Of a stretch of 64,000 nt of DNA, positions 31,901 through 56,365 are shown piece after piece. Where the stretch lies: contig NC_086375.1 in NCBI RefSeq assembly GCF_036588685.1, forward strand, positions 79,360,001 to 79,424,000, read 5' to 3'. The notes beneath the pieces were generated by a model, which worked only from the letters and a program-made list of their open reading frames with translations, was not told where the DNA came from and ran no database searches. Origin of the DNA: Mytilus trossulus (Eukaryota). Position 1 is the stretch's first letter. Each line of letters begins with the position of its first letter. A program made the position numbers and the translations under genes.

Positions 31901-33193
31901 CTAACGGTGAATTTTGGGATACATGACCTTTTACAATTTTTGCCTTAAAACATTTGATAAAAATGTTTGTTATTCTTATAGAGATGACTGCACTTTTTAT
32001 TGCTATGTTAGGAATATGGATTAGTCCCCTTTGAACTTTTCGATGTTTATATTTGAATATGAAACTGTTTTTGGAGTTTGCTCTCAGCGTTCAGATAATC
32101 CAAATCGGAAAATAATATATATATAATTCCGTATGTTCAACTATGATGCCTCATCTTCTATGCAATACCATGAATTTCTGCACTGGACACGATTTATTCA
32201 AGCAATTATAGTCAATTGTCTCATTTAAGGTTTGAACTCTTACAAAACATAAAAAAGAGAAATAAAAACTAATGCATCTTCGATTCTCTTTGTCAAATAA
32301 TTTAGAAAAAAAGTATTGTTTCAAATAATATTCATGCCATAGAACATTTTCATGATATCAAACTCAAGACACTTGTATAGTTTTTAAGGCCATGATATTA
32401 TTTTTTTATTGTTCTTCTTTAAACTGTTAACATATTTTATTTTTCTTTCTTTTGTGAATATATTTTTACTCAATATTCATTTTTGATAAAAAAAAAAAAA
32501 AACAATAAGCGTGATGTTATAAATAATATGGTTAATTAACCAACTGTAAGTTGAAATGTACGAAACTGAAAATAGTTTAACAATTGTACACGCAAATTTA
32601 TTTTTGAAACTTGGGTCTCTTATGTCGTTTTTTTAGCTGTATTTGTTAATATTTTTGTTCGATAAATTCGAACTTTATTAGGCCATTTAAACTTTCTTGA
32701 TTCCAGCGTTACTTATCCTGCTGATCGTGAGTCATTTGTATCGAAACACGTCTGCCTTTCACAATTTGAAGCCTGATATCTATGATGTGTGTCTCTTTGG
32801 TAAATATGCTACCACCCTCTTTTTTTTATACAAAGGCCAATATTTTTCAACATTTAACAGTTGCTTCGAAAATAAAATTTATTATGTAAATAGTTCAAAA
32901 TAAATAGACATTTAACTAATCAGTAAAATAAAAAGATATAAAAAATATAGAATGAAAAGAAATAATGAAAAATCATAGCACCTTACAGTGCACGTCAATA
33001 TGTTATACGTCATGGTAAGTGGTGTTAACGTACATTCATCAACAATGTCTTATAATATCCGTTTCCCAATAACTCCATTGTTTTACATAAAAAGAAGCAC
33101 ATACAGTATTCTATTTAAAACAACAGACTATTCTAATCATTGTTCAAAGCCGTCATTACACAATCGAGCATGACAGTTCCATTTTCTTTTCTT

Positions 33194-36100
33194 TCAATAT
33201 TTTCTCTACAAAATGAAGAAATATATAGTTATACATGTCAAATTATTCATTACTGAGGGTTTTTTTTAAATACTTTCATTGTATGCTCCAGGTTGAAATT
33301 TCTACATAAAAGTTTATGACATCTATGACACTTATAGTTTTCCATCAAACTTATAAAAAACTGTAGTTTCGACGCTAATATAATCACGGTATCTACTAGT
33401 GAAAATACTTAGTTTGTTTCTTGACTTCATTTATTAGAAAAGGCCGTCTAAGTCTGTATTTACTTCATAATCTGGGTCAGTTGAAAAGGTTTGATTAACT
33501 TTTGACACTGAATGTATTTTTTGCTATTGTGATTACCTTATCTTTTTTAAAACACATATCTTCCCTGTGTTGACCTATAGATGGATTTAAGGGATGTAGT
33601 AAAAAAAATAAAAATTGGAATTATGTCATGAAACTCCTTTTCGAGATATTTGGTTATAAACCATGGCTGCAAAAGAAAGACACTGACTTTTATTATCCTA
33701 TTGCCACATAAACAGAAGATTTGGCTAGTCATAAAACCAGGTTTAACCCACCATATTTTCTTAAATTGTCATGTACGAAGTAAGCATGTGGTATTTCACA
33801 ATATTTAGGCTTTACTGTACTTACCTTTCCATATGGTGTTGATACTTGGTTTCGGTTTACAGGTGTTCTCAATCTAAAGATAATATCATAAAAAGTTTAA
33901 CATTTTTTGTTTGCAAATTAACCATGCTAGTAGAAGCAGCTGTTTTTCGTCCTTTTTGGACGTGTTTTGAATTTCACCATTATAAGCAGAGCCGATCAGA
34001 ATAAATGATGAGTGCATTTTGCATACGTTGGTCCCATACCGATTTCATTACATGTAGTTTAAGTTATCACAAGCCTAGTAGTCAGCACTTTTCGTGCTGA
34101 CATGAATTGTCATTGATATGGTTATATTTATAAATTTACTGTTTAAATTTTTTGAATTTTTTGAAGTACTTAGGCTTTTCTACCTCAGGCATAGATTACT
34201 TTAGCTGTATTGTGCAACTTTTTTTAGGAATTTTGGTTCTCAATGCTCTTCAACTTCGTACTTTATTTGGATTCGAGCGTCACTGATGAGTCTTTTGTAG
34301 ACGAAATGCGCGTCTGGCGTATATACTAAATTTAGTCCTGGTGTCTTTAATTAATACATTTTGAAAATCAGAATCTACGATGGTTAAGATGATACCTGGC
34401 ATTAAGATAGCAATAAATGAAACCAAAAAGGTATGAAATAAGTCTTTGATGTTTAAAAAGACCCTTACGTCCTTTATCAAGTAGTTAATCATCCCAATTA
34501 TTCATAAGCATCGTAGGAAATTTTGAAAATAAACATGACATTCCGAAAAACAGACATTTGAAACCCTACATCTCAATGTTACATACTACTGTATGCAATC
34601 GTGTGACCCACATTTCGTAGCTCGTATTCCTATTTTGCTGCTTTTATGTACTGTAGTAATTCAATTTTAGGTGTTCGTTGTTATTGTTGTTAACATGTCG
34701 AAACGAACTATTATATTATGTATTTATGTATTTCTCTGTCCTGAGTTTTGTACTGTATTCCTGTCATTTAATATTGACATTTACCGGTACTTTTTACATT
34801 GAAATCAAGCGAGAGGTTGGGCTAGCCGTGAAACCAGATTTGATTCAGCATTTTTTTCTCTTAAAAAGTCCTGTACCAAGTCGGGGAGTTGACAGTTGTT
34901 ATCGTTCATTTGTTCGATTAATAACTTTTGAACTGGGTATACTACTGTTGTCTTTAATTTACATTCACTAAGTATGTGTTTATACATACCTCTTTTCCTC
35001 CTCTGATAGTAGTATCTTCATGGCTTCGATTTCTGCTTTAAGTGGAATGTATGATTCCTTGGATACATTCAATTCTTGCAGTTTTGCAAACACAGCATTT
35101 TGCATGTCTTGCAATCTTTTCTCCATTTCACGAAGCTGGGCAGCTGCCATCAACCTTTCTTGTGCAATAAGATCTCCCAACGATTGTTTTTCTTGTGATA
35201 AAGAGCTTACCTACAATAATTCATGTAATGGAGTAGATAATCTTCACGGAATTTTCTTTTCTTAATGGTAAAATGATCATATATTTTTGTTTTCCTTTAT
35301 AAAGAAATAATCTTAAGTAAACAGTGAAAAAAAACTTTACATTGGACAACCCGAATGTTTTTTGTATGGTTGTTTAAATCTTGAATCCTAAAATGTTTGT
35401 AAAAAATTTAACGGAATAGTGCGGTTTAATTGCATTATAAGAACAGAAGTATTACTAACGGCAAACTTGAGTTACTGGAGGCAATATGGTGACCTATAAT
35501 TCATCTTCGTCATGAACTCTAGTTGAGAGTTGTCTCATTGATCACTCCAGTTTAATTTCACAATTTCTAAAATTGTTCAAGTGTCTAATGGGATACCAGC
35601 AAGATTGGTTGAAAATTGAAGCGTGCAAATCAGAACTTTTCCCGCATAACTGATAGTCATATCAAATATGCAACTAAATCTTAATATTGCAAGATAGAAA
35701 TTTTCATTAACCGTTTAAAGGAATTACATTCACAATGATTTCAACATCATATATAAGAAAATATTTACTTGTGCTTCAAGATTGGCAATTTTGGCTTTTA
35801 AGTCACCGAAACTTCCGAAAATTCCAGCCTTTTCTTTTTCTAGTCTTGCTAAAGCAGCGGAATCACTCTCCATTTTTACTCTCAAAGTAGAGATCTGTAA
35901 AGATAAAATGATAATATATGAAATCAATTTAAACATTTGGATAAGCGTTGGTAAAAAAGAACCAGTATCGGATATAATGAAAAATTATATCGAAATGCAC
36001 TTTGAATAAAGAACTATCCAATTTATAAATTTTAAATAAACATTTGTAAATACTATTTAATGGCAATTTCTTTAATGTGTTACATTGAAAAGTCTTATAA

Positions 36101-39100
36101 TATGTATATTACGCTGTCATTATGTTTCCTCTCAGTCTCAGCCTGGTGCTTCCTCATATCTTCCTCTGCTGCTAGTCTAACTTGTCTCAGTAACTGTGGT
36201 ATATCTGTGTCAGATTTGTTCTGCTCTCGGATTTTAGACTCAAGACTCACTATAGTAGTGGTTGATGTGTCTAAGCGTTGTTTTAGATCACTCAACTGCT
36301 GTCTTAGAATGTTGTTGTCAAATTCGGCTTTCTTGGCATAGGCAGCAAATTTTTCCTCCACATCTTTTCTAATTTGCTGCTCTTTTTCCCATCTTTAACG
36401 TTTAAATAAGATAGAAAAAAATTTAATGTGATCGTAAGAAAATAGAGCTATTGATTTCAATTTCATAGGACACAACTGAACAGACTGTCTAATGTTGTTT
36501 AATTTAAGTTCTTGTTTGCAATATTCTTTTTATGTTCTGATTTTATTTCAAACAAATATGAGATGTCTTCTTAATCAAAGACTTAACATTCTTTCATTTT
36601 TTTCTCAACTCTATTTTTTTTAACCTATCTTACACAAAAAGACAAGTGTTATTTTGTTAAAGTTTAATCTGTAAACTAATGAATCCAGTAAAACCCATGA
36701 AACATGGCGTATTTTTTTAGTTTAGCTATTTCAGTGCACGCATATGTACCCGGCACTCAAATAGAATGGAGTAATTGTTTACCTTCCTTTGAAGTCTTCT
36801 CTTTCTCTGGAGAAATCTGCTACTTGTTTTCTTAGCGATGGACTCTCGTCGACAGGTTTAGGTGCTGACTTTATTTTCGTTAGTTCTTGCTCAAGACAAC
36901 TTATCTTCACCTGATAATTGTTGATGTTATTGACTAGTTCATTGTTCTTGCTTATTTCTTGTGTCAGCCTATATATGGAAAACATATAATAAATTACATT
37001 AAGTGTAACACAAAGTACACCGGATATGAATAGATGTCTGTCAAAACATTTCTTAAATTGATTTAACTGTGACATCTTTTACTTGTATAACTGAATCTTA
37101 CAGTATCATGTCGCAGCTTGAATTTCAAAGCAATCTCAAATTTGATTTTCTTAGGAGGTAGGTGATTAATGGTTTAAGTTCAATGAAGATTTGATAAATG
37201 TTTTACTCTATTCATCCCATACGGTAACTGACAATTTTATTTTATTGTTCCTTAGATTCGAACAAAAGTGAAACGAGGATGTTCTATTTCTGAGAACTTT
37301 CCAACTCTTCTGACTATCAAAAAATCAAAACCTTTCCTATATTATAGCAAGATCAAAGTTCTGTTGTTACTATTTCGTATTATAAAACATTACCTGTTTT
37401 CTAAATCTTTTATAGCTTGTAAATAGCTTCCATTTTGTTGTTGATATTTGTTCTTTTCAGAAACAGTGTCTTGAAGCTGTCGTCTACAAAAAAAATCAAA
37501 ACTGATAAGTTGTTGTTATAATTCAACTATACTAACTGAATTATTCTAATTTTAAAAACAAATAAGGTATTAACATGAAATTCCGATTGTATAGGTATGT
37601 GTCAATAATGTATTATTATGTATGAGTGCCAATGAGACAACTTTACTTCAAGAAAGAGAATACCGGACTAACCAGCGTCAAATTTTAAGCAGGTTATAGA
37701 ACATAATATGTGTAATATTATTTTGTAAATTAGACAGGAGTAACCTGCGGAGATAAACCTTTTTTGTGTGTATGCGTGAAACTTTATGTACGTCTAATTC
37801 GTAATCTTGTACTTTCTATTTGAATATAAATTTTGTTTCGTAATTTGTAAAAGAATATGTAAAATACTTTCAATATAAAAAAGAAGATGTGGTATGATTG
37901 CCAATGAGACAACTATCCACAAAAGACCAAAATGACACAGACATTAACAACTATAGGTCACCGTACGGTCTTCAACAATGAGCAAAGACCATACCGCATA
38001 GTCAGCTATAAAAGGCCCCGAAAAGACAATGTAAAACAAGTATATTTTACCGTATATTGTTGAGCTCAGATTCATACATTGCTTTCAGTTTTCCCAATTC
38101 ATCTTCCAGTATTTTAATAGACTGGACGAAAGCAGCAGAATCTGTTTGTCCATTTTTTTCTCCAAGCTGTCTTACTCTAGTGATATATTCAGATAATCTA
38201 TTATTCAGTCTCAGTAATTCATCCTTATCTGACAATCGACCGAATGAAGATAGTGGTCTGTAGTTGGTTGTTGGTGTTCCTGGACTGTACTGTAAACCTT
38301 GTAGTCCCTGAGTTGCTGACCGTTCGAATCCATGAGATGCTGGCCTTTCCAGTCCAAGCGTTGCTGACCGTTCCAATGATTTCGATATGTCACTGACGCT
38401 TATTTTGCTCTGCTTATGACCTGGGTTTAAGCTTTTTGACATAGAATTGCTTTTGCCCAAAGATTTTCCTGGGTAGCCATAGTAGGTTCTGTATGTCGTG
38501 TTGAAAGAACTTAGAAAAGATAAAGTAGAATTACAACAGCCGAATACACAATACTTCTATCACAAATAATTTTCTTTTACTTGGTAAATGGAAATTTCAA
38601 AATAAAAAAATCTATTTTACTCATTATACAACAACCTACTTGTCTTCAGTGTTGTAGAACTAATCGATGTTGAAAAAAACCCTGGCCATAAAAAAAATCA
38701 AATGAATGAATTTAGAAACAATAACTATATCGAACTATATTGAAAAACAATTTTCTCTTTCAACGCATAGAAAAATTCATTTAATTTATTTTGTGAAATT
38801 GGTGATAGGTTTGCGAGTCATATATTGATAGGATTTCTATGGTTGCACTTTTTATCATGAATGTTTTAACTATCATATGTACTTAAACTTGACAGATTTT
38901 TTTATTATAAAAGGTTGAGTTTACCATGAGCTCATTTCGAAGAAGAAATCAGACACTCTAAGGACTCCGGGTATAATTAACAACTTCGAATTGAGTTGTG
39001 GTATAAGACCAATAGTGTTGTAGTCTCGCGGATTGTACTTGGTCACTCATATATTGTTTAAAAGGTTAAATTAAATATTTGCTGAGAAAAAAATACAATT

Positions 39101-41080
39101 ATTTTAGATTAAGAAACAAATATCCCTAATACAAATATCTAATTCCTTGTTCTGATTTGGCTATCATTGGTGTCCTTTTTCTTTTGGTCAGCTTTTACCA
39201 CTTTTTTAAAAGGTATAAAACTGTCAAATATTTCAGCTTCGAGAGGTAAAAAATGTCGAAATGCATTACTAATGGAATCCTAAATGGTTTAACGGTTCTG
39301 AGAAATCTGAATACAATTTCCTTTGAATTTGTCGGTTTATTGTTGCGTGGTTAAATTTTTTATTTTACAATGAAAAGTAGTTCCTATTTCAACAGGTTGG
39401 TACTTTGAGCTTATTTTCAGTACCTATGGTAATTCTTTGTTGCGGTTTAATAATTCAGTACTGTTTTAATTGTAAGTCTTTAGTGTCTGTGGTACCGTAT
39501 AGTGTGTTTCATTGTATATTTGCCTGTTCCAAGTCAGGGTCAACGTCTGTAGAGGGTTCATTCCCTTTTCACGTACGTTGGGAATCAAGTGGTATAGATT
39601 CCAAATTATCTCTGTGTACTGTTAGGTAAGTTATTTCTTTCACGAATTTTAATTCTTATTTTCTTATTGTAGGTTTGTGATTTTAGTAATTGGCGATCGT
39701 TCACATACCAGTATCTGGCATATTGATAGAAATACGATTTTAATATTTTATAATGAAGGATATTAAAAAATATATAAGTAAGGACGGAAATTGGTATTAT
39801 ATCTTGATAAATTCTAACTTTTTTGTACATTAATATGTTACAGGTATAGGATATAAGATTTGATATTAAAATCGAATGTATTTTTTTTAATTCATAAATA
39901 AGGCCGGATGTTGATCTTTATTTGCTTTTAAAATCTTCATCTTTTGAACCCTGTTGAATAGTTGTTTCAATGACATTCACACAACGCTCCATTATTTGTA
40001 TACTTTTATACACTACTAGAGTAGAATCAAAATCACACAAATGCGAAAGAAATGAGTATGGGATGGATGAATGTAGGGATAGAACTCTATAAAATCCTAT
40101 ATGACTATATAATATTGATTTTACTGCTGGTTTTGATAGTTCAAAGAATGTTCCGGTTCTTTTTCTTTTCGATTTTGAATTAATTCTGAACGTAACATAT
40201 TTAATTTTGTAATAAATTATGGTTATAAACTGGTTATTATTAACAGATATCTTCAAACTTGCTCACCAAAAACAGAACAGTTACTCGTTTAACTAAAAAC
40301 CCTAGGTACTAGAAATATATTCGTATTTTTCATGAACATTTCATTCTTACTTCCGATCGAGTTTTGACGACCACTTTTATGTGAAAAGAGCCCCATGTCA
40401 CCTCAAACGCAATAAAAAAACGCAATCAATACGTTTTCATGATAAAAAGTAAAATTACAAAAGTAATGAACTCCGAGGAAAATTCAAAACGGAAGGTCAA
40501 CAGGCAAAATCAAAAGCTCAAACACATCAAACGAATGTCATTTTCCTGACTTGGTACATGCATGTTCTAAAGTAGAAAATTGTGGAGTAAACCTTGTTTT
40601 ATAGATAGCTAAAACTCTCACTTGTATGACACTCGCATTAATTTCCAATAAATTTACATTCAATTGGTAAGTACAGGATTGTTGCTAGACCTTCCTAAGT
40701 GCTATGTTAAACGATTTCCTCGTTTACTTTAGGACTCTGTATGTAATGGTTTTATTTGTCAGTCAAATGTATGAAATGTGTTTTTTTAGATGTCAAATCC
40801 GAATTTTTAACATATAGTATTTTATGTTCAATATATTAACAATGCCTGTACATTTGTGCCAACATCTGTTTCCGTTAAAAATCACGGAAAAAAACATTAT
40901 AATTTTTCATACATTATGTTACTGAAGAAACGTAAACGGCAAAACATTATTGGCATATATATCTATATAGTTAAAAAATGCATCAAAAACATTTTTAAAA
41001 AATTCCCCCCTGTGGTCGGGTAGATTTCGTTGCCCCGGTGTATAAAAATCTTACCTCGGTTGGTACATGCCGTAATTCAT
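33194..41080 (-). CDS. Intermediate filament protein, lamin-type long rod, no Ig-fold tail (paralog 1), ~482 aa
   Basis: Exons 41080-41055 (MNYGMYQP, donor GAG|GTAAGA), 38509-38051, 37483-37394 (90), 36968-36783 (186), 36392-36113 (280), 35894-35769 (126), 35210-34990 (221), 33873-33825 (49), 33205-33194 (RKY*); all phase-compatible, total 1449 nt. Coil-1A ELLRLNNRLSEYITRVRQL; rod end LKAEIEAMKILLSEEEKRL. AATAAA on the minus strand at about 32883-32878. First and last exons are less certain than the rod exons. Confidence 0.88.
34075..34342 (+). mobile_element. Retrozyme-like family A copy in an IF paralog 1 intron (antisense to the gene)
   Basis: Family A body with a hammerhead at 34277-34320. 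Confidence 0.75.
34277..34320 (+). ncRNA. Minimal type I hammerhead ribozyme (core intact, U-G wobble in stem III)
   Basis: GCGTCA CTGATGA GTCT TTTGT AGAC GAAA TGCGCG TC TGGCGT. Confidence 0.8.
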
Positions 41081-42960
41081 TTTTCCTGAGAAATGGATGT
41101 CAGTTTACACTAGCAACATCCGTGTATTGATGATATTAAAATGTTTGTGCATGGATAGTTTGTATCTATGGTTTCCATTCGTAAATAAAAACAAAATTGA
41201 AATTTGCATATTTATTTGATTTTTCTATTTATGGTTTCTGATATAAATATGATGCACAACTAGTCAGTTGTTACGAACGCATCGGTTTGTTTGTTGATAG
41301 GCGTTTCTGTGTACTTTAGATTTATCTTATAAACATACTCTTCCGTTAATGGTTAAGTTTAAATTCTACTAATGCCCAAGTATAAAAAGCAATTTATTTT
41401 GAAAAAATAATATCGATGAATTCCTGAGGCATAAAATAAGCTCAGTTTGATCTGATGTTTTCTACCATGGCAGAATAATGTGATAATAAAACTGAAAATC
41501 GATTTCTTCGACATTATTCTTAAGTGACATTTACATACTGCCGTCAATTGTTCTAACCATGCGTCTTTTTTCTTGATCTGACATATTTTTGTTTAAGTTT
41601 TCAGCAATTCTAGTTTATAAATATCAGAAGATTGGTTGTTCCAGCATGTTATGTACGTCTTGCTTTAAAATTTGATTGGTTTCCACGCAGCTCAGAATAC
41701 CACTGGTAAAAGTACAGGAAATCGGATATCAGGTTCTTCAAAATTTATGTAAAAAATATTTAAATTCAACACCTATAGTATTAAACATATATGATGTCAA
41801 AATCCATCGTATTAGAAAATATATATAATTAGAAGCAGTGGGTCGTATAGTTTTAATAGGTGTTTTTCTGTATGTATAAATCTTTCAGAAATGTTTATTT
41901 GGTAGATTGTTTATTAAAGGCGTTCAATATTCAAAACCTAATTGGGTAAGTCGATGTGAGGAGAAGAAAAGTTGAAGGTTTAAAATAAATTAAATTTTCA
42001 GGCATGCCTAGTATCAAAAGTAATGGTGTATATTCATAATATATATATATTTTTTTTATTTTTTTTTAGAATATTTTATTTACCAAATTAGGGCCCCAGG
42101 AGGGCATACGATAAAGATATTGATGAATTTATCCGAATGAAATAAACGCAGTATGAAAAAATACTATGTCGAATGCTATTGATGGATAGATATTATAAGA
42201 TGTGGACAGTCCATCAATAACGGTCCAGGGGCGTAGACAGGGATGAAGAATGGTATCTTGTTATTTCTCAACACATTATATGTATATGTAATCATATAAG
42301 ATGAATAAACAAAAATATTTCAAATTTTGTCATAATCTCATCTTGCTTTCAACTGTCATCTTATGTTTATGTTTCAAGTCAAGCCCTGAAAGAAGTATCG
42401 TTGAAAAAGTATAATAAAAAAGAATATCGAACTCAAAGACAAATAATAAAAGTACAAGAAAGTCCATAAAAACCGACGAAATCAAATGCTATAAAGTGAA
42501 AACAACTGCTATGGATATTCCATTTTCTTTGTTTTTTTATTATCATAATCCTGATTTGGTCCAGATATTTTCCGAAGAACATGGTGGTTTAACCTGGTTT
42601 TATATCTACAAATATAGTAGTAGTAGTAAGAAATGAAGACGAAATGTTCATTTTAAGCCAAATACGGCATTCAACTTCAGCGTTTTCATAAAATTAAAAA
42701 ACGGCTATGACTTGAGTCTTTTAAAATGGATCTATTTCACACACCTGCCTTGTTTGTAAAAAAAATCTCTTCATAAGAGCACATTCTTGACTTCAAAATC
42801 AACACAATTTGGATATCTTGTCAACATACGATGATTTGTGCATTTTTGGAACCTAAAAATTTGAGGACAACCTTGGCCGCAACCATGGATCACAAATGTT
42901 CTGTGATAAAAAGTTGCCACTGGCGATATTACAAATAAACCTGCTGTTGAGTTTATTGAA

Positions 42961-43536
42961 AATGAGTAGGTGCGGTAAGAGCCGATTTGGTCTCAAATTA
43001 TTCCTCTTATGAAAGATTTGGGACACTTTTCAAACACACAAGCGTCTACTTCCGTCAATTCAATTAGTTTATGTGAAAGATTTGACCTGATTATATTACA
43101 GACGCTCTAATTCAAGCTGGAATATGAAAAAAATCTATCAAATATGCAATAATATGTCAATTTTCAGATGGTTTTTGTCAAAAATGAAAGTGGCCGCATC
43201 CGTGTCACTCTCAACCTTTATATGTGTGATGTATTATCATCAAATACAACTTACATATGAATATTACTAGAATGAACACACATGCAGCCATTTTATTTTG
43301 AGACGGAAACCGACTGAAAGTTATTAAAATGTTAAAATTGTGAAGATTTCAGTAATTTAGCATGACTTAATGATGCTAGTACCAGATATTTGTGCATTGT
43401 ATTGTCCAAAACAGTCCATATTTATGTAGCAGAAGTATTCTACTTTCCAATAAAAAGCTAAAAGTTTACATTTAAACGATTTTGTAAAACTGCTATATTT
43501 TGGGACCAAAAAGGGGTCTTACTGAACATACTCCTT
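42961..43536. mobile_element. Intact TIR MITE (family D), ~575 bp
   Basis: Imperfect TIRs AATGAGTAGGTGCGGTAAGA ... TCTTACTGAACATACTCCTT; colinear with the split copy at 26308-29039. Confidence 0.75.
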
Positions 43537-44431
43537 TCAGCAAAAACTAACGTCACAACACACAAAAACATATACTTATGGAGTCAAAGTTCCAAAAGTT
43601 TTGGTATTAAAAGTAATACCACACCTTTTTCTATGTGAAATTTGTAGTATTCTGGCCTGATCAGTAGTGTCATCAAAATCTTATGGCCAATTTTATCAAC
43701 CACCAATTTGGGTAAACTACTGGTGAATCTCTAAATGACGATTTCGTGTATTTGTGTTATAGAGTTGATTTGTGTCATATTTTTTTTAAATATTTCCTTT
43801 TTATGATACCCTAAGAATGATTATGAACTAAGTTATTTTTACTAGTAGTTTTAACTAGAAGCTATAAGGATAGTATCGTAAAATGTGATATATGTTTGAG
43901 ATATCATTATGCACAGTTGATATCAATTTGAAAGCAACTCAATTGGTCATTATGCTGATTTACAATTCACATCACGTTTTCTGATCATATTACTGTTTGT
44001 AGTGCAATACCAAATGTTTACAAGTTAACCGACTAATTATAGTAGTAGTATATTTACAGAAGCACTAGCCACGAAGCAAGTGGTATTATATAATATTGAC
44101 AGTCATGCCATTTTTAGGGATGCAATTTGAATGTTAATGGCATATAAAAGTGAACACAGAATGAAAGAATACCAATTATTTTCTAAAGCATTACATTTAT
44201 ATCATCTAATCATAAGATAAGTCAATTCATATAGTTGGACGGATTACAATAATTTATGTCATATTTACTACTCTTACATAACTGTTTTTTGAATTTAAAA
44301 GAAAAGATAAGTCTGTTAAGAAGAAGCTCTACATTGCATGTCAGGAAGTTCATGTATTCATTTACATCTATACAATTAATTTGGTGCTGTGAAGTTTCGC
44401 TCGATTTCTCACTGTTTAATATGCATTCTTC

Positions 44432-47400
44432 TCAATCTGTGAAAAGAACAAATCATGTGCAAAATGAATTTGAATGCATTAATTATTTGTTTGTGGATTA
44501 ATGTTGAAATGTTATCATTCGTCTTCGATGACTGTTAAATTGTTAAAGAACAATTGATCTTCTTCACAGTCAATATACCATACAATAAAAAGTAGCAATG
44601 TATGATCATCTGTTTTTGTACTAGACTTGTGGATGACTTGACACTATAGCAACTTGTGTGGCCTTTTATAGGTTGCTGTTCGGTGTGAACCAAGGCTCCG
44701 TGTTGAAGACCGTACTTTGACATATAAATTAAATGTTTTTTCTTTCACAAATTGTGACTTGGATGGAGAGTTATCTCATTCGCACTCATACCACATCTTC
44801 TTATATAAGACATGTGGATCCACATGTATCACTTAGTTCATCAAAAATGTTATTGTTTCGACATCATAGTAAACAAGAATGTGTCCAAAGTACACGGATG
44901 CCCCACTCGCGTTATCATTTTCCATGTTCAATGGACCGTGAAATTGGGTGAAAAATCTAATTTGGCCTTAAAAGTTAACAGATCAACCAAAAGGGAACAT
45001 GTGTACTAAGTCTCAAGTTGATTGGACTTTAACTTCATCGAAAATTACCTTGACAAAAAACTTGAACCGAAAGTCACACTTCTGATTTCTATGTTCAGTG
45101 GACCATGACAATGGGATCAAAAGTCTAATTTGGTTTTAAAAATAAGAAAGATCATATCATAAGGAACATGTGTACTAAGTTTCAAGTTGATTGGACTTAA
45201 GCTTCATCAAAAACTACCTTGACCAAAAACTTTAATCTGCAGTGGGACGAACGGACGGACGGACGGACGGTACGACGAACAGACGGACGAAAAGACGCAC
45301 AGACCAGAAAACATAATGCCCCCTCTACTATCGTAGGTGGGGCATAAAATAGAGTTTATTAATTCGTCGGTTACTTAGTTTCTATTTCAATGTTTAAAGT
45401 TATTGTTCTTCCTTTATTTTCCTCTTACAGTTGATGTGTTTCCCTTGATTTTGGTTTGTAACCCGTATTTCTTTTCTCTCAATCGAAGTATGACTTTCGA
45501 ACACCAGTATACTACTGTTGCCTTTATTTATATACATTATTCGTTTAGTAGAATAAAGAACACTTCGACTGTATCTTGTAATAAGAACAAAAAAACTTAC
45601 ATCTATATTTGTTGTGATAGCGTCTGCAGTACCCAGGTCTGTAGGATGCTTGGTGATAGGTATTTTTATGTCCACCGGTTCCTACATAAGTACGTGTAAC
45701 TGCAGGGATGCTGTAGCTAGACGCTTGTGCACGTGACACTGCAGGGGTGTAACTCATCGTTTGAGAACGTGTCATTCCGGGGTGGTAGCTAGCCACTTTT
45801 GTACTCGTCATTGCAGGAGCGTAACTAGCCACGTGTGTTCGTGTCATTGCTGGGCTGTAACTAACCACATTTGATACAGTGCTTTCGTAATTTATTGGTG
45901 CACTTAATCTGAAACGAAAAAATAATGTGAAATGAAAATACAGCATAAAAACGAAGTGGAAGATGCCAAAGGGACAATCAAAATTAATGTTCGAAGAACA
46001 CTGACAATATTGAAAACGCCACGTTATAAACGACAAAAAGACAAACAACAGAACAAAAAAACAGTTATGAAATAGATATTAAAGAGACACAATTTTTTTT
46101 TTTGATCTATTGACAAATGTAAATTCTGAATAATTAGATTTATATCGCATGTATGCTAGTAACATACACGGCATATTCCTTGGAATTAGGTACATGTAAT
46201 GAGTCCGTTCTAACCCATTCAAAACAGCAACAAGCCAAAACAGATAATTTCGTTATTGTAATTTTTTCTCCAATGTACTTGATGTGTAATTCACATGCAT
46301 GGTTTTATTTCTAAACGGTTCCAGTTGTCCCTCATAGTCTATTTCATGTTTAATACATTATACCTTCTTTCTTCTTCTGCCAATAACATTTTCATCGCTT
46401 CAATTTCTGCTTTAAGTGGTATATAGGAATCCTTGGAAACCTTTGCTTCTTCTAACTTAACAAACAGTACATGTTGAATCTCTTTAAATCTTTTCTCCAT
46501 CTCTTGAATTTGTCCAAATGCCCTTGACCTTTCTTGTGCCAATAAAGCTTCTAATGACTGTTTTTGTTGTGCCATTGCACCTACCTAAAAGAAATTAGAT
46601 CCTTTATCAGAATTGCGTGTTTTGCGCACTGGTTGCATATAATATTGATCCGTTGTGATTTTATGTACTGACTGGAAGTTTCAGAAGAAATTTATAAAAA
46701 ATAGAGAGAGAGATAGAGGGAAAAACTGAAGAAGATGTTTTATGTTTATTGGTATTAATTCTGATAATCTGATTGTATTTATGACTTCCATGGTCGAGAT
46801 ACAAGATTTTTTTTTTAAATAACTATTGTTGGAAGGAATCCAGATTTAACAATAACATCGGGACAAACATTACAACATCGGGACAAACATTACAACATTG
46901 GGACACATATTATTACACCGGTGTTGTTGTTTTTAAACTAGTAGGACAAAAACTGGAATTAAACTTAACAGTATCAATTTCGGGTCAAGCATATTGTTGT
47001 TAGTATGTTTTTACAAGATAGTCGAATGAACTCGGGGCAAACACATCTCACGTAGAAGTTATAATAGCATACAAGACAGATACCCCCAAAAATGTATAAC
47101 ACATACAACTGTTCTGTGTTTAAAATAATAACTAAGATACTCTTTCGGCAATATTTTTTAACCTACAGGTTTACTTTTATTATGTAAAAATCTTACTTGT
47201 GATTCTAAGGCAGCAATTTTAGCTTTAAAATCTCCGACACTGCCCATAGCATAAGACTTTTCCTTTTCCAATCGTCCGATAGTGTCGGCGTCGTTCTCCA
47301 TCTGGGATTTCAATACAGAAATCTGCAAAAAAAATTATATCGTTTCATGATATTGAAAGATAGTTATATACTGTATCTTACTCAAACTTTTCACATACAT

Positions 47401-50400
47401 GGGTTTTTATTGCCTTCCTTCCTTTCCGATGCATATTGTAGATTTTAGCGGAGAGGTGTTTAAAAAAATATTAAGGGAAGGATACTTTGTATACAAACTT
47501 ACGCTTTTACCATATCTAGATTCAATGTCCGACTGATGTTTCTTCAACTCGTCTTCCGCTGCATGTCTTACTTGTCTGAGGATGTCTGGGATATTTGTAT
47601 CAGTCTTACTCAGTTGACGGATACGTGTCTCCAGTGACAGTATATTAGCGGTTGTAGCCTCTAATCGTTGTTTTAGATCAGCGACATGCTGTCTAAGGAC
47701 GTTGTTGTCAAATTCGTATTTTTTTGTTGAAGCAGCAAAGGCTTCCTCTACGTCTTTTCTAGTTTGTAGTTCTCTTTCCCATCTAAAAAGAAAATTGTGT
47801 GTAATATATATTAGCATCTGATACATTTCAATATACACCAATTATGTTTTGCCCTAAACCAGAGACATATAATACAATTGTATTATATGTCTCTGCCTAA
47901 ACTAAACTTAGATAATAACGAAGTTAATGAGACAAAGGGTTAATCATAAGTAGCTCAGGGTGGTCAAATATTAAAATATTAATTTAAAAAACACAAAAAA
48001 AAAACCACAAGACCTTAAAAAAATAGACAAATACTGTAACACTTGTTTTCTTTTCCACATTGTCAAATTATCCGCCTGTTAAAATATAAATGGACTGTCG
48101 AACACCGCTCTTACAAAAAAGTGACCTTTTATTTCAATGTGAAAGTGTAACGTAGAACAGTCAGAAAAAGAAATTAACAAACAAACAGGAAGCATAGTCA
48201 ACACAAGCAACAACTAGAATATGAAAGACCAATGTGCTAACTTAGCTAAAACATGTTGCTTTTCTGATGCAATTTTAATAAAATGTATTCTAAAGCAAAC
48301 AAAGGGGGTTATTTTCTTAAGGATGTTTGCTATCTTCTTTTTGAATTTTTGCCAGATTTTCGGAATCCTCTTGTTTTATCCATGTATTGCCATTCAAAAA
48401 TTTGCCCATTAACCCCTTCTTTTCTATTCATAATTTTGTTACATAAAGTTCAAAGAGCCATATTTCAAAATCTTATAAAATCCTTGTTATTTTTTCATAG
48501 TTTTTGAAACAGAAAAGTGTCTATGTTAAATGTATGAAAAATCTAGAGAGAATTATTTCCCGCCAAATTTTCTATGGCTTATATCTCGAAAACAAGCACA
48601 CAGACCCTCCAAATTTTTCTGCTTTTATTTTTTCTTTATCTATATACTATCAATTCATAACAGTCTTTTGAAAAGCTTGTTATTTTTAAACAGAGAAGCA
48701 AACATCCTTAAACAAATCAAGGTACAACTTTGAAATATAGAAAACAAATCCTAGTACTATCTGTAAAAGTGGTGAAATTTGGTGCCGTTTGATTTTTAAT
48801 TGTTTCCCCAAGCATTGTTCTGATGGTTTTGAAAGGAAAATTACACTTAAATTAAGGTGGTACCTAACACTTTCATTAAAATTAATTTGGCTCGTTTAAT
48901 TTTGATAGAATTTTGACAACGTATTTACTTTGACCCTGTAACAAAAATATAAAAATTTCAAAAATTTTGAACCAACCGTTTTGTCAGAAAAATTACACTG
49001 GTTATATAGCACTTTGACAAACACCAATTTTGATCTGTGAGAAGCTACTTATTCCCTTTACAACGCAACGTTATCAAAACGTTTATCTGAATTTACATTG
49101 CTATCTCCCTACAGTGTTAGGTACCACCTTCATTTGACATTTGTACTCTTAGAGATAACCTAACTTTATTATTACCTTCCTTTGAAATCTTCCCTATCCC
49201 TCCTTAGATCTGCTATCTCTTTCCTAAGACTTGGACCTTCATCCAGTGGTTGTGGTGCCGATCGGAGTTTAGCTATTTCTTGTTCTAGACAGCTTATCGT
49301 CTGCTGGTAGCTAGTGACATTTCCAACTAGCTCACGGTTCTTGTCAACTTCTAGTGCTAATCTGTTGTAGTAATAGATTTATTTTGTTATTTCAATGGAT
49401 TCTTTAACTTAATAATATAATATCATATTCGTTAAAAAAAACATATTTTGTATAATCCATTCAACTCAAATGACAAATATTCATTTGCTATTACTTAGTA
49501 GTATGTTATTAATTATAGAGAAAAACTGTGGACTCTTTGAGAGTTGTTAAAAGTGTTTTAACGGTTAAATAGAAGATGTCACTTTCCCTGCATCGAAAAT
49601 TGGGTTTGACATTTTCATTCCGACCGAACATGGTTACGACTTTATACATTCCCCAAACCCAAATGAATGCTCCTCCTTACCAAGGATTTCACTGCATGGC
49701 AGGAGAAATCCAGGGATTACCATTTTTCTCTACCCTTTCCCGAATTACAAGAGGTCATAAGTTCATGAGGTTAAAAAAAATCTGTTTCAGTTTGAATTAT
49801 TTCCTTTTGTTTGAAGAACGAGAGAGAAAGGAACTGGTTTGAATTGTTCTACATTGTCTTATCGGGGCCTATAGCTGACTATATGCGGTATGGGCTTTGC
49901 TCATTGTTGAAGGCCGTACGGTGACCTATAATTGTTAATGTTTGTGTCATTATGGTCTTTTGTGGATAGTTGTCTCATTGGCAATCATACCACATCTTCT
50001 TTTTTATATGGACATTACTGAAAGGCACTTTAGTGATTTGTGATTAAAAAAGCATGTGTTTTTCTTTTGTCATCATGCAGTTGTGTTACCTCTTTTCCAA
50101 ATCCTTAGAGGTTTGAATAAAGCTTCCATACTGTTGTTCCAAACTGTGTTTATCTTGTACACTTCCTTGCAGTTGTCCTCTGTAAGTAAATTTAACTAAT
50201 GATAATTTTCTTGAAACATGGAGATCAAATTGATTCTTAGTGAATCGTGGAATTAAGTTGGAAGTTATTTTGCTTTAACTACTATTACCTCAGGCTTTCT
50301 TTATATATTATTAATTCACTGAATTGTACCCAAATGTTCAAAGGTTTATATTTCGTTCTGGTTCAATATCCGTTAAATTATATACTATATGTATATGTAT

Positions 50401-51474
50401 GGCTTTGAAATATCTCAATTAATATTTAAACTTAAATCAAGCTGTTATTATTAAAGTCATACATCTAACGTAATGCTCATTGCATCAGTTGGATTGAAAC
50501 TGTTTAACTTTTTAAAATCAATTTCCATTTTTTTTTTTAATAATTCGAGTTTGATAAATTAAAATCAACATATTACGTTAGAGCTTTTTAAACAATTTCT
50601 CTCTGTACATGGGTATTTTTAGCAAAGAAAACATAATAGGATCCTGAGTAAAAAAAATGAATTGATTATTTTTTTGTCATTTCAAAGATCTTCAAAGTTA
50701 GTGATTTTAGATCGTCAAGAAGCTATCTATGTAAATGGTATAAACGCCCTTGTTTCTACTCTCCTCCTCATTATCTTCTACCTTTTTCTTAGGAAATAGT
50801 GAAACAAATATTTATAACGTCAATAAAATTCAAAAAATTTAAGTTTAATTTCATTTGCAATATAGTAAAACAACAACAAAAATGGGAATATATATATTTG
50901 TCAATTGGATTTGTTCCCCCCCCCCCCCCCGTATATTTTAAAGTATGAAATACATGCTTTGAATCGCACTAATCAGCAGTACCTTAAGTTTGCGAGTTCG
51001 TATTCATATAAGTCCTTCAGTTTTAAGACTTCGTCTTCCAATATTTTAGTTGATTTGAGGAATGCCGAAGAATCGATCTGTCCACGTTGTTCCCAAAGCT
51101 GTCTTACTCTGTTTATATATTCAGACAACCTATCATTTAGATGTTGTAGCTCAGCCTTGTCCTCTAACTTAATCGTTCTCTTCATCCCATAGTCATTACC
51201 TCCCCCTGACTTTGAGTAACTCAGGTTAGTTACTCCAGTATTAAAGTCATCTCCACCAGAGGAGCTGTACGACTCCCAAGCTTGTTGAGTGGACGGGTAA
51301 TATGATGGTGATCGGAATGTCGTTGTTCTAGGACTTACAAAGGCGTTTGTAGTTGTCTTGTATTGGTAGGGTTGGTCATAGCTTTTGTACAAGTAATTAC
51401 TTTTGTTGTTGGGTTTGTATGTGCAGCTTCTACAGGCCTTATCATTATAGAAATTTTTGTAACTGGTATCATAT
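44432..51474 (-). CDS. Intermediate filament protein, lamin-type long rod, repetitive Tyr/Ser/Thr tail (paralog 2), at least 569 aa; start exon not located
   Basis: Exons 51474-50983, 50179-50090 (90), 49361-49176 (186), 47782-47503 (280), 47322-47197 (126), 46584-46364 (221), 45908-45601 (308), 44436-44432 (completes ..KYRY*). The five central rod exon sizes are identical to paralog 1. Coil-1A ELQHLNDRLSEYINRVRQL; rod end LKAEIEAMKMLLAEEERRL. The first located exon begins in phase 2, so an upstream ATG exon is expected. Confidence 0.88.
44872..45348 (+). mobile_element. Helentron-associated (HINE/pearl-like) non-autonomous element
   Basis: AACAAGAATGTGTCC start, two ~165-bp internal tandem units (about 44921-45068 and 45089-45237), a (GGAC)n microsatellite at 45252-45270, and a terminal hairpin ATGCCCC..GGGGCAT. 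Confidence 0.75.
46852..46915. repeat. 20-bp tandem repeat, 3 copies (ACAACATCGGGACAAACATT)
   Basis: Directly visible, in an IF paralog 2 intron. Confidence 0.8.
47860..47895. mobile_element. 36-bp perfect palindrome with 7-bp TSD (probable P-superfamily excision footprint)
   Basis: CCTAAAC|CAGAGACATATAATACAATTGTATTATATGTCTCTG|CCTAAAC. Confidence 0.65.
48321..48707. mobile_element. Kolobok-like MITE (TTAA TSD)
   Basis: TTAA|GGATGTTTGCT ... AGCAAACATCC|TTAA. Confidence 0.75.
48856..49128. mobile_element. Kolobok-like MITE
   Basis: TTAA|GGTGGTACCTAACACT ... AGTGTTAGGTACCACC|TTCA (16-bp TIR, one-mismatch TSD). Confidence 0.75.
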
Positions 51475-54390: not shown

Positions 54391-56365
54391 ATTTTTAAAG
54401 GAGAAAACTTGAAGATATACCCTAACAAAATCCTTATCAAGATCCTGATTTGATACAGGCCCTATATCGTTCAACAAGAAGTCAGAACTTGCACCTTTTT
54501 TTTTTATATTAGTTAGAGGAAGAGCAAAAGGAATACAGTGGAACCTACAAAACGCTAATTAAGAACTTTATTATTGACACGGAAGACGACAAAAATAAGT
54601 ACGTGCAATACAATTAAAAAAATTCTGAAAGAACAAGTTCCTATATCAACAGATTACATGAAGTCTAGTGGTGTGCATTTATAATAGATACAATAATTAT
54701 AATAGGGTCCAACAAAGTTTTCGCAAGGTTGATCTCGAGTAAAGTGTAATTTGTCACTTCTTATTTTATATCTTTGGAGTAAATGTCCTCAATTGGGCGT
54801 GGTTGTTTTCAAACGGATTTGTTCGTGTATGCCTTCTACATGTACAACAAAACAAATGTCCCGAGTAATGGGACATGTAATGACTTGTGTTAAGGAAGTA
54901 TAACTTACTCACACCTTTATTCTTATTAAGTTCGAAAAAACTCTGATTCTCATCACAACGTCTCTTTTTTCACGATGAGGTCCTCAGACGGTGGCCATGT
55001 GTTCTAAGAAGTCAAACAACTGTATCACTAGTTTACAACAATGGGGTTAAGAGTTCCTATCCCGCTCGTGGCAGGTACTTTCGACTCCAATCTAAATTAA
55101 CTAGGATTGTCACTTTGCCTGTCGAATAATCGGTGGTTTTCACCTGTCTTTTCACTTTCCTTTCTTCTGAAAGCTGTCCGCCACAAAATAACCAACAATG
55201 CTGAGCTACGTTAACCGTACTTTGACCAAACATGGTTTACTTTTATAAATTGTGACTTGAACGGAGAGTTGTCTCATTGGCACTCATACCACATCTCCTT
55301 ATATCTATTAAACACCAACCGATCAAATTTTCATACTGCTTGGTTTGGGGTGCATAGATGCTGCATACATATCTCAACTTTGTGACATCAATAGTATCTA
55401 TTTGATCTATCGTACTGGTATTTTACATTCACTCTGATTTTAAAAACGTCATTCTTTTAAAAACTGATAGTTGTGTTGTCCTCACTTACTATTTATTTAT
55501 TATTTTGATGAGTGTTGATGCAAATTAGTTTTTATTTACCATTTCAATCATTTGATGTGCTTTGAAGATTCCATGGGTGTCTTTTTCATATCAATAACTT
55601 GATTTCGAGCAGTTTTTCTTATTTTGCTCATCATTTTCCAAACAATCTATGCCTCTAAAATTCGTAACAAATATTTTTCGAAAAACTTCAAATAATATGT
55701 AGCTTCAGCTCCTTGCTTAGTCATGTTATATTTGTCTGGCTGTTCTTTTCTTACCTTGGATTTTGCTTTCTTCCAGAACTTGGATTCATCCATGGAAACA
55801 TATTCGAAAATCTTGGTCTTCCTTAGATTGTATCTACCGAATTCAGTCTACGAGTAAGAAGTTGACAAGAGCTTCACAAAGCTGCACCTATTTAGGATGA
55901 CGAGTGTAACTAGGAGGCAGATCGTTAACATTTGAAATATGCATAAATAATTTTGCTGATCTGTATTCGTTTATTTATGTCCTTAAATACAGAGGACTTA
56001 GTATATAAAATACTTGTGAATGTTCCAGGAGCCAACTATTCGGTTATTCACCTTTTGTGTAATTAAATTTGCACTCTCTGTCTTCCCAAAAGACCATGCA
56101 TGGACACTAGATACTTTTCGATTGAAATAAAGAGGTTTAGTTAAGTTATTATAATCTTTTTGTTAATAGAAGAAAAATTCAAGTACTTTTGGTTTTCAAT
56201 TGTGTACTATGTGAAGTAGATCTACTATATAAAAAAACTGGGATATTTTTATTTCTATTTCTTTATTTTTAACAAAATATAGGAAACAATAACAAACTCT
56301 GAGTTTTCTTTAGAAAAAAAAGGTTTATTTCTTATGATGCGTATGTTTTTGATTTTTAGCTTTCG

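What the first reader, a model, noticed from the sequence alone, without database searches (positions are those of the whole stretch)
33194..51474. Tandem pair of highly divergent lamin-derived intermediate filament genes with no Ig tail or CaaX and a rewritten rod-end motif
Seen: two paralogs share identical rod exon sizes (90/186/280/126/221 nt) and a rod of about 360 residues from coil 1A to its end. Known: lamin A has about 355 residues over that span, including the 42-residue coil-1B extension, and its exons 5 and 6 are 126 and 221 nt; lamins and most protostome cytoplasmic IFs carry an Ig-fold tail. Here neither gene has an Ig fold, an obvious NLS or a CaaX box. The near-invariant LDxEIxxYRKLLEGEE becomes IPLKAEIEAMK(I/M)LL(S/A)EEE in both copies, and both carry a Pro-rich break in the rod (SAPKPVDESPSL / SAPQPLDEGPSL). 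The changes are shared and both frames are intact, which argues for selection rather than decay. Inference: a lineage-specific IF subfamily, possibly an obligate heteropolymer pair in the manner of keratins, with altered assembly.
Basis: partly seen in the sequence, partly recalled or inferred. Interest (0 to 1): 0.8.

Follow-up and report, generated by a model that had tools for sequence, protein, structure and literature searches.

The report
Tail-less nematocilin-type filament genes in mussel
The two genes are real, expressed intermediate-filament genes of the mussel Mytilus trossulus. They are not a new filament class: they are tail-less copies of the ancient cilia-associated nematocilin/cilin (LMNTD1) family, which RefSeq already annotates under misleading lamin names.

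Summary
Two minus-strand genes share rod exons of 90/186/280/126/221 nt, a lamin-length rod, the motif IPLKAEIEAMK(I/M)LL(S/A)EEE, a proline segment in coil 1B, and no Ig tail, NLS cluster or CaaX. RNA contigs from two studies confirm every splice of gene B, including a 20-residue tail.

- The window is Mytilus trossulus chromosome DNA. The genes are RefSeq XP_063425974.1 ("lamin-A-like") and XP_063430306.1 ("prelamin-A/C-like").
- They are two of a tandem trio; the third copy lies about 12 kb before the window start. A fourth paralog on another chromosome keeps a long tail with a lamin tail domain.
- The family runs across Bilateria (scallop, oyster, gastropods, nemertean, annelid, hemichordate, amphioxus, lungfish LMNTD1). 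It is the nematocilin/cilin class of Kollmar 2015 and Kremnyov 2025.
- The "rewritten" rod end is a class signature. The coil-1B proline is widespread in the class, and the proline-rich form is shared with the tailed mytilid-lineage relative.
- Kollmar already listed rod-only nematocilins in Capitella, Saccoglossus and Hydra.

Keratin-like obligate pairing is untested. Verdict: a new, lineage-specific member of a known kind, of modest interest.

The parts
55755..55801 (-). Gene A exon 0, coding part (MFPWMNPSSGRKQNP plus 2 nt of a split codon). ATG at 55801, donor GTAAGA.
   Evidence: tblastn of P0135 is 100% identical here; sequence read; translation found verbatim in P0135.
50983..51474 (-). 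Gene A exon 1: Ser/Tyr/Thr-rich head plus coil 1A (LNDRLSEYINRVRQL...).
   Evidence: Splice sites; Pfam Filament positions 2-59, E 2.5e-7; verbatim in P0135.
50090..50179 (-). Gene A exon 2 (90 nt), start of coil 1B.
49176..49361 (-). Gene A exon 3 (186 nt), coil 1B with the proline segment SAPQPLDEGPSL.
47503..47782 (-). Gene A exon 4 (280 nt): end of coil 1B, linker L12 (SKTDTNIPD) and start of coil 2.
   Evidence: weak Filament match to positions 185-267; it heads the four-paralog profile (A, B, C, D) that found the family.
47197..47322 (-). Gene A exon 5 (126 nt, phase 0-0), coil 2.
   Evidence: The mussel's own lamin gene has an exon of the same size and phase.
46364..46584 (-). Gene A exon 6 (221 nt), end of rod with IPLKAEIEAMKMLLAEEER.
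   Evidence: The mussel's own lamin gene has an exon of the same size and phase.
45601..45908 (-). Gene A exon 7: tail with five roughly 12-residue SYxPA repeats and a Tyr/Arg/His/Lys-rich end. Donor AGAT|GTAAGT.
44432..44436 (-). Candidate last coding bases of gene A (AT plus TGA, giving the final Tyr and the stop). A second acceptor at 45237 would give the same protein, so the choice is unresolved.
   Evidence: Acceptor scan. The RefSeq protein ends ...NKYRY. No reads were laid on gene A.
41055..41080 (-). Gene B exon 0, coding part (MNYGMYQP plus 2 nt).
   Evidence: Peptide search; sequence; verbatim in P0181. The RNA contigs carry 32-76 nt upstream of exon 1.
38051..38511 (-). Gene B exon 1: head plus coil 1A. 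The acceptor lies at 38509-38511.
   Evidence: RNA contigs cover 38053-38511; Pfam Filament E 6e-5.
37394..37483 (-). Gene B exon 2 (90 nt).
   Evidence: RNA joints.
36783..36968 (-). Gene B exon 3 (186 nt) with SAPKPVDESPSL. The AlphaFold2 model breaks the helix at residues 227-233.
36113..36392 (-). Gene B exon 4 (280 nt).
35769..35894 (-). Gene B exon 5 (126 nt).
34990..35210 (-). Gene B exon 6 (221 nt), rod end IPLKAEIEAMKILLSEEEK.
33825..33873 (-). Gene B exon 7 (49 nt), tail residues LRTPVNRNQVSTPYGK.
   Evidence: RNA joints 34990>33873 and 33825>33205 in all four runs laid; translation.
32800..33205 (-). Gene B last exon: RKY, stop at 33196-33194, then 3' UTR that runs on below 32800.
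   Evidence: RNA contigs cover 32802-33205 and continue about 540 nt further; translation.

Best explanation
Genes A and B are two of three tandem, rod-plus-short-tail paralogs in Mytilus of the nematocilin/cilin (LMNTD1-type) class of cytoplasmic intermediate filament proteins.

The class arose from a lamin before Bilateria (taken from the literature). [quoted passage not shown] M. trossulus keeps one such full-length gene on another chromosome.

In the bivalve lineage leading to Mytilus, a duplicate lost everything after the first tail exon and was then triplicated in tandem (shown by the tree and the tail searches). All copies have since been kept under purifying selection.

The proteins have a disordered Ser/Tyr-rich head. 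The rod has four helical segments: coil 1A, a coil 1B split by a proline linker, and coil 2. The tail is short, disordered and basic/aromatic at its end. They have no nuclear targeting or farnesylation signal.

Inferred, not shown: they dimerise through the rod and assemble into cytoplasmic filaments, alone or with each other or with the tailed paralog. Their most likely site is ciliated cells and sperm, where members of this class are enriched in ctenophore, oyster and sea-urchin larvae and human.
For: Gene structure and identity
- Exon structure and splice sites.
- Every in-frame exon translation is found verbatim in RefSeq XP_063425974.1 and XP_063430306.1 of M. trossulus.
- Gene B splicing and its short tail are confirmed by RNA contigs in three runs from two studies.

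Selection
- 17 synonymous against 4 non-synonymous differences in those transcripts.
- Paralog pN is 0.22-0.32 against pS of 0.66-0.89.
- Orthologs of each copy occur in four to five Mytilus species.

Intermediate-filament nature
- Pfam Filament scores 70.8 bits over profile positions 2-313 for the copy-C ortholog P0002. It is precomputed for the gene A protein and for the galloprovincialis ortholog of gene B.
- The 126- and 221-nt exons have the same phases as in the mussel's own lamin gene.

Family
- Four paralogs in the genome, three of them in tandem.
- A profile of exon 4 finds 76 proteins. These include 790-1160-residue Filament+LTD proteins of scallop, oyster, Solemya, gastropods, nemertean, annelid, hemichordate, amphioxus and flatworm, and lungfish 'lamin tail domain-containing protein 1'.
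- Gene A against lungfish LMNTD1 gives E 6e-38 over the whole rod; against the best solved lamin A it gives 6e-11.
- Paralog D has LTD exons at 92% identity to P0004. No tail-like hit exists near A, B or C.
- In the tree, A, B and C form one clade (SH-aLRT 100) inside molluscs (97).
- Motif conservation across the class.
- The AlphaFold2 model gives helices 96-126, 133-226, 234-309 and 319-465.

Literature
- Class definition, rod-only members and ciliary expression: PMC4448529; bioRxiv 10.1101/2025.08.21.671432.
Against: - No reference nematocilin (Hydra, Nematostella cytovec, oyster) and no canonical lamin or cytoplasmic IF was in my tree. Placement in the class rests on the lungfish LMNTD1 link, the shared architecture of the long relatives, and the two papers.
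- The tree is the quick search (SH-aLRT only, midpoint root); the careful search did not finish.
- Tissue and cell type of expression are unknown, because the runs are coded. The ciliary role is inference by homology only.
- Expression of gene A was not tested with reads.
- A rod end that has lost the Tyr and the Gly of the consensus, and a coil 1B interrupted by prolines, could impair canonical assembly. Filament formation is assumed, not shown.
Confidence: 0.8

Rival explanations
1. One reading: a new, lineage-specific IF subfamily whose rewritten rod end and proline break changed assembly, with the two genes acting as an obligate heteropolymer pair in the manner of keratins.
For: - The duplication is lineage-specific.
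- The paralogs are old, with saturated synonymous sites, and all are retained in several Mytilus species. This is compatible with division of labour.
- Heads and tails differ strongly between copies while the rods stay 50-60% identical.
Against: - The rod-end variant predates the duplication and is shared with tailed relatives in other bivalves, gastropods and beyond; the proline-rich segment is likewise shared with the tailed mytilid-lineage relative P0004.
- There are three tandem copies plus a tailed one, not a pair.
- There are no acidic/basic partner classes and no co-expression data.
- Rod-only members of the class were described in 2015.
Confidence: 0.1
2. They are nuclear lamins, as the RefSeq names 'lamin-A-like' and 'prelamin-A/C-like' suggest.
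For: - Lamin-length coil 1B, and lamin A as the best match among solved structures.
- Lamin-like exon sizes.
Against: - No basic NLS cluster, no CaaX and no lamin tail domain.
- A canonical lamin with KRKR, an LTD-like exon and the LDLEIANYRKLLEGEE motif sits elsewhere in the genome.
- Exon queries from gene A do not even detect that lamin at E up to 10.
Confidence: 0.02
3. They are decaying duplicates (unprocessed pseudogenes) that merely keep open frames.
For: Tandem duplicates with truncated tails and divergent motifs.
Against: - All frames and splice sites are intact.
- Spliced full-length mRNA contigs exist.
- 17 synonymous against 4 non-synonymous differences.
- pN is far below the saturated pS between the paralogs; a dN/dS estimate (0.06-0.18) was obtainable for only two of the six pairs.
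- Orthologs with conserved rods occur in M. trossulus, edulis, galloprovincialis, californianus and coruscus.
Confidence: 0.02

Closest known systems
Nematocilin / cilin class of cytoplasmic intermediate filaments, including rod-bearing LMNTD1 of lungfish, turtle and frog (Hwang 2008 as cited; Kollmar 2015, PMC4448529; Kremnyov et al. 2025, bioRxiv 10.1101/2025.08.21.671432)
   Same: - Lamin-length rod.
- The Q-x-D-S-x-A-F break early in the rod.
- The rod-end variant xPLKAEIExxKxLLxEEExRL followed by RLxxP.
- No NLS or CaaX.
- Clear sequence kinship: E 6e-38 to lungfish LMNTD1, and 76 profile hits across Bilateria.
   Different: Genes A and B lack the Ig-type lamin tail domain and the conserved C-terminal 'nematocilin tail domain'. 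Paralog D and the long relatives carry both.
Rod-only nematocilins listed by Kollmar 2015 (Capitella CptNem_B, Saccoglossus SckNem_B, Hydra nematocilins; Supplementary Fig. S6 legend)
   Same: Same class, same loss of the Ig and tail domains. A short Saccoglossus protein (XP_006822677) is among my hits.
   Different: - In my tree the Mytilus copies arose independently inside bivalves.
- They were amplified to a tandem trio.
- They have their own tails: SYxPA repeats in A and 20 residues in B.
Human LMNTD1/LMNTD2 (IFLTD1)
   Same: The same ancestral gene class according to the two papers. They are also truncated derivatives.
   Different: The mirror image: the mammalian proteins kept the tail domain and lost the rod, whereas the mussel copies kept the rod and lost the tail.
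Nuclear lamins and canonical protostome cytoplasmic IFs (rod plus LTD)
   Same: - Coil 1A LNDR motif.
- Long coil 1B.
- 126- and 221-nt exons in the same phase.
   Different: - No LTD, NLS or CaaX.
- Tyr and Gly of the YRKLLEGEE consensus are replaced.
- A proline linker sits inside coil 1B.
- Exon queries do not detect the mussel's canonical IF genes.

Membership tests
Intermediate filament proteins (Pfam PF00038 Filament) | Rod domain recognised above the curated cut-off. | tested here: met
   P0002 (ortholog of the third tandem copy) scores 70.8 bits against a cut-off of 40, over profile positions 2-313. PF00038 is precomputed for P0135 (gene A) and P0136 (gene B ortholog). Single exons reach only 23-31 bits, for coil 1A.
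Intermediate filament proteins (Pfam PF00038 Filament) | Conserved ends of the rod: LNDR-type start and TYRKLLEGEE-type end. | tested here: inconclusive
   The start motif LN(D/N)RLSEYI is present. The end is recognisable but degenerate (LKAEIEAMKxLLxEEE), with Tyr and Gly replaced. The rod-end exon alone gives no Filament hit.
Intermediate filament proteins (Pfam PF00038 Filament) | IF/lamin gene structure: 126-nt and 221-nt exons closing the rod. | tested here: met
   Sizes and phases are the same in genes A, B, C and D and in the mussel's own lamin gene on another chromosome.
Intermediate filament proteins (Pfam PF00038 Filament) | Assembly into 10-nm filaments. | not testable with these tools
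   Needs recombinant protein and electron microscopy.
Nuclear lamins | Nuclear localisation signal after the rod. | tested here: not met
   No cluster of four basic residues in five. The only K[KR]x[KR] matches lie inside the coiled coil.
Nuclear lamins | Ig-fold lamin tail domain (PF00932). | tested here: not met
   The tails are 105 residues (A) and 20 residues (B). tblastn with three LTD-bearing tails finds nothing at E up to 10 in the window or in the 30 kb ending about 4 kb before it, yet finds the LTD exons of paralog D.
Nuclear lamins | C-terminal CaaX box. | tested here: not met
   The C-termini are ...NKYRY and ...GKRKY.
Nematocilin / cilin / LMNTD1 class | Sequence kinship with recognised members, closer than to lamins or other IFs. 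| tested here: met
   - Lungfish LMNTD1 is hit by the exon-4 profile (E 2.4e-6).
- Gene A against lungfish LMNTD1 gives E 6e-38; against lamin A it gives 6e-11.
- The tree follows the species tree.
Nematocilin / cilin / LMNTD1 class | Rod followed by an Ig domain and the conserved nematocilin tail domain (Kollmar 2015). | tested here: not met
   Absent from A and B. Present in paralog D and in the long relatives. Kollmar lists accepted members that also lack both domains, so the architecture is typical rather than obligatory.
Nematocilin / cilin / LMNTD1 class | Expression in ciliated cells or sperm. | not tested
   Gene B is transcribed, but the tissue of the runs is not disclosed.
Keratin-like obligate heteropolymer pairs | Two complementary chain types that assemble only together and are co-expressed. 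| not tested
   No multimer prediction or co-expression data were available. There are three tandem copies, not two classes.

The most novel reading that the evidence does not exclude
The three tandem rod-only copies, with or without the tailed paralog, form a mussel-specific heteropolymeric filament system. Its proline-hinged coil 1B and altered rod end would give it assembly or mechanical properties unlike any studied intermediate filament. It could, for instance, be specialised for the very large ciliary apparatus of the gill or for sperm.
Probability: 0.1. Interest if true: 0.55.

Novelty: new member of a known kind. Interest (0 to 1): 0.3.

Why it matters
The practical result is a correction. 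Five Mytilus genome annotations call these genes lamin-A-like or prelamin-A/C-like. They have none of the lamin-defining tail features and belong to the nematocilin/cilin class.

For intermediate-filament evolution they add an independent case of domain loss in that class. Here the rod is kept and the tail lost, which is the opposite of mammalian LMNTD1/2. This loss was followed by tandem amplification.

Mussel gills are a classic ciliary tissue. That would make these genes a convenient system to ask what cilin-type filaments do, and whether the Ig tail is needed for it.

Tried and rejected
- A Pfam scan of single exons gave only weak coil 1A hits, plus noise from other coiled-coil families.
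- A whole-genome scan with PF00932 found nothing, not even in the lamin genes. The domain is split over exons, so the blank is uninformative.
- NG86 dN/dS between paralogs: synonymous sites are saturated, so only the qualitative result is usable.
The species behind the short-tailed Logan transcripts P0138, P0139 and P0003, and behind P0004, stay unknown.
- The search for homologous proteins with P0060, to obtain a named cnidarian nematocilin, returned only two unnamed proteins.
- Kollmar's sequence file is truncated in the library and holds gapped rows. Motif look-ups failed.
- Accession searches in papers were blank. The mussel gill proteome paper names only a generic cytoplasmic IF.
- The careful tree search did not finish in 300 s, so the quick tree was used.
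- The nuclear-lamin, pseudogene and non-IF coiled-coil readings were considered and rejected for the reasons given under the rival explanations.
- The window's exons were never joined into a spliced protein. Searches used single exons or database proteins returned by the tools.
Full report
**What is in the sequence**

The region holds two genes on the minus strand. Open stretches, splice sites and frames give, in both genes, five rod exons of exactly 90, 186, 280, 126 and 221 nt with identical phases. These follow a first large exon that encodes a Ser/Tyr/Thr-rich head and coil 1A.

The quoted motifs are all there:
- LNDRLSEYINRVRQL / LNNRLSEYITRVRQL
- SAPQPLDEGPSL / SAPKPVDESPSL
- IPLKAEIEAMKMLLAEEE / IPLKAEIEAMKILLSEEE

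Searches used single exons, or database proteins that the tools returned.

**Transcription and gene models**

Logan contigs of four runs were laid on window 32800-38700. In three runs from two studies, one contig of 1.8-2.4 kb crosses every predicted junction of gene B. It then continues through a 49-nt exon (33873-33825) into a last exon that starts at 33205.

Translation gives the tail R-LRTPVNRNQVSTPYGK-RKY and a stop at 33196-33194. The contigs carry 32-76 nt upstream of exon 1, which fits a small first coding exon found at 41080-41055 (MNYGMYQP).

The contig length of 94,312,406 identifies the genome as Mytilus trossulus.
- Gene A is RefSeq XP_063425974.1, 'lamin-A-like', 584 residues.
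- Gene B is XP_063430306.1, 'prelamin-A/C-like', 482 residues.
- Every in-frame exon translation of the window is found verbatim and in order in these proteins.
- Gene A also has an upstream coding exon at 55801-55755. Its tail is 105 residues, with five SYxPA repeats, and ends in ...NKYRY.

Gene A's last few coding bases can come from either of two acceptors (44437 or 45237). I had no read call left to decide between them.

**Selection**

The transcripts differ from the genome at 21 listed positions inside coding parts of gene B. Of these, 17 are synonymous and 4 are not. In the rod exons 2-6 the count is 8 to 1.

Between paralogs, synonymous sites are saturated (pS 0.66-0.89) while pN is 0.22-0.32. 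Orthologs of each copy exist in M. trossulus, edulis, galloprovincialis, californianus and coruscus. These are old, maintained genes, not decaying duplicates.

**Not a pair**

Exon queries against the window's own genome find exactly four loci:
- A and B in the window;
- a third tandem copy C about 12-16 kb before the window start (RefSeq 'prelamin-A/C-like' X1-X3);
- a fourth copy D on another chromosome.

All four share the 186/280/126/221 layout. The canonical lamin and IF genes of the mussel, which the Pfam Filament model finds easily, are not detected by these exon queries even at E of 10.

**What the family is**

A profile of exon 4 from the four paralogs was run against 1.84 billion proteins. 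It gave 76 hits, 41 of them below 1e-10.

The full-length hits are of two kinds. The first kind is long proteins of 790-1160 residues with Pfam Filament plus a lamin tail domain far down a long tail. They come from:
- scallop, oyster, Solemya, Babylonia, Biomphalaria and Patella;
- the nemertean Tubulanus, the annelid Owenia and the flatworm Macrostomum;
- the hemichordate Ptychodera and amphioxus;
- the lungfish, whose protein NCBI names lamin tail domain-containing protein 1.

The second kind is short forms without the domain, from Lingula, Saccoglossus, Ptychodera and unnamed transcripts.

Gene A aligns to lungfish LMNTD1 over the whole rod at E 6e-38. Its best match among solved structures, lamin A 1-300, reaches 6e-11.

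Two papers describe this class. Kollmar 2015 (PMC4448529) defines nematocilins as rod plus Ig domain plus a conserved C-terminal domain. [quoted passage not shown] Kremnyov et al. 2025 (bioRxiv 10.1101/2025.08.21.671432) unite ctenophore cilin, cytovec, nematocilins and LMNTD proteins. They note that lungfish LMNTD keeps rod and LTD. They also show enrichment in ciliated cells of oyster and sea-urchin larvae, and in human ciliated cells and spermatids.

The legend of Kollmar's Supplementary Figure S6 already lists members that lack the Ig and tail domains: Capitella Nem_B, Saccoglossus Nem_B and the Hydra nematocilins.

**Where the mussel copies sit**

Paralog D has the LTD exons (92% identical to the long relative P0004) and the conserved C-terminal parts. 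The same tail queries find nothing at E up to 10 in the window or in the 30 kb of this chromosome that ends about 4 kb before the window start and holds copy C.

A quick maximum-likelihood tree of 30 rods (SH-aLRT support, midpoint root; the careful search did not finish) shows the following:
- Mytilus A, B and C form one clade (100).
- That clade sits inside a clade (100) with three short-tailed transcripts of unknown species and the tailed P0004.
- This in turn sits inside bivalves (92) and molluscs (97).
- Deuterostome members are separate (97).

The tail was therefore lost after this lineage split from oysters and scallops, and the short gene was then triplicated in tandem. In Patella, one gene is annotated with both long isoforms and a 575-residue short isoform. 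A short product may thus have existed first as a splice form. This last point is inference.

**The 'rewritten' features**

The family alignment shows that IPLKAEIEA[LM]KxLLxEEExRL is the norm in tailed and tail-less mollusc members. Brachiopod, hemichordate, amphioxus, lungfish and flatworm members also lack the Tyr. The nemertean (EIEAYKVLLEGEEKR), the annelid (EIESYRAILEAEERR) and three unnamed short sequences keep a near-canonical motif.

A proline at the coil-1B site occurs in scallop, oyster, two gastropods, nemertean, annelid and amphioxus. The proline-rich form (AP...P) is shared by A, B and C, the short transcripts and the tailed P0004.

An AlphaFold2 model of gene B, built with the 30-sequence alignment (mean pLDDT 72.9), gives four helices: 96-126, 133-226, 234-309 and 319-465. 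The breaks fall at the conserved QxDSxAF site, at SAPKPVD and at L12. Head and tail are disordered. The proline break is thus real in the model, but it is not an invention of this pair.

The 126- and 221-nt exons, with the same phases, also close the rod of the mussel's own lamin gene. This supports the lamin-type ancestry of the gene structure.

**Function**

Shown:
- transcription of gene B;
- purifying selection;
- an intact IF-type rod;
- no NLS cluster, CaaX or Ig domain.

Inferred:
- cytoplasmic filament formation through the rod;
- possibly co-assembly among the four paralogs;
- by homology with cilin, oyster nematocilin and human LMNTD1, a role in ciliated cells and sperm.

The tissue of the runs is not disclosed, so this was not tested. 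The keratin-like obligate pair is not excluded, but nothing supports it.

**Verdict**

The genes are annotated in RefSeq, though misnamed as lamins. I rate this a new member of a known kind, with interest about 0.3.

Noticed in passing
L012/L013 (G000 C9, about 69952979-69957200), an intron of the tailed paralog D: About 66 tandem copies of a 64-bp unit. Each encodes a close copy (70-100% identical) of the last 19-20 residues of the preceding exon. In other words, an exon end has been amplified into an intronic array.
   Followed up: no
L001/L003 (G000 C3:79342852-79355207), about 5-17 kb before the window start: The third tandem paralog (RefSeq 'prelamin-A/C-like' X1-X3, 511-519 residues in the Mytilus species). 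It has the same exon sizes, a 58-residue tail and a first coding exon about 6.7 kb upstream.
   Followed up: partly
window 34094-34375 and 37872-38039 (introns of gene B): Two short stretches have summed contig depth in the tens of thousands in all four RNA runs. They show many loose ends and joints between the two places. They look like copies of an abundant, transcribed short repeat family rather than part of the gene.
   Followed up: no
L006 (G000 C4:66678154-66686317) and a near-twin at C4:68107945-68112202: A canonical lamin-type gene (LDLEIANYRKLLEGEEDR, RGAKRKR, LTD-like exon) appears twice on the same chromosome, about 1.4 Mb apart, with almost identical Pfam scores. This may be a recent segmental duplication or an assembly duplicate.
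   Followed up: no
Protein C-termini of short family members (P0135, P0181, P0054, P0053, P0048): Short-tailed members from distant taxa end in a basic stretch followed by an aromatic residue: ...KYRY, ...KRKY, ...KRVY, ...PQVY, ...LRRF. Two share YRPGY. This could be a conserved terminal motif or chance.
   Followed up: no
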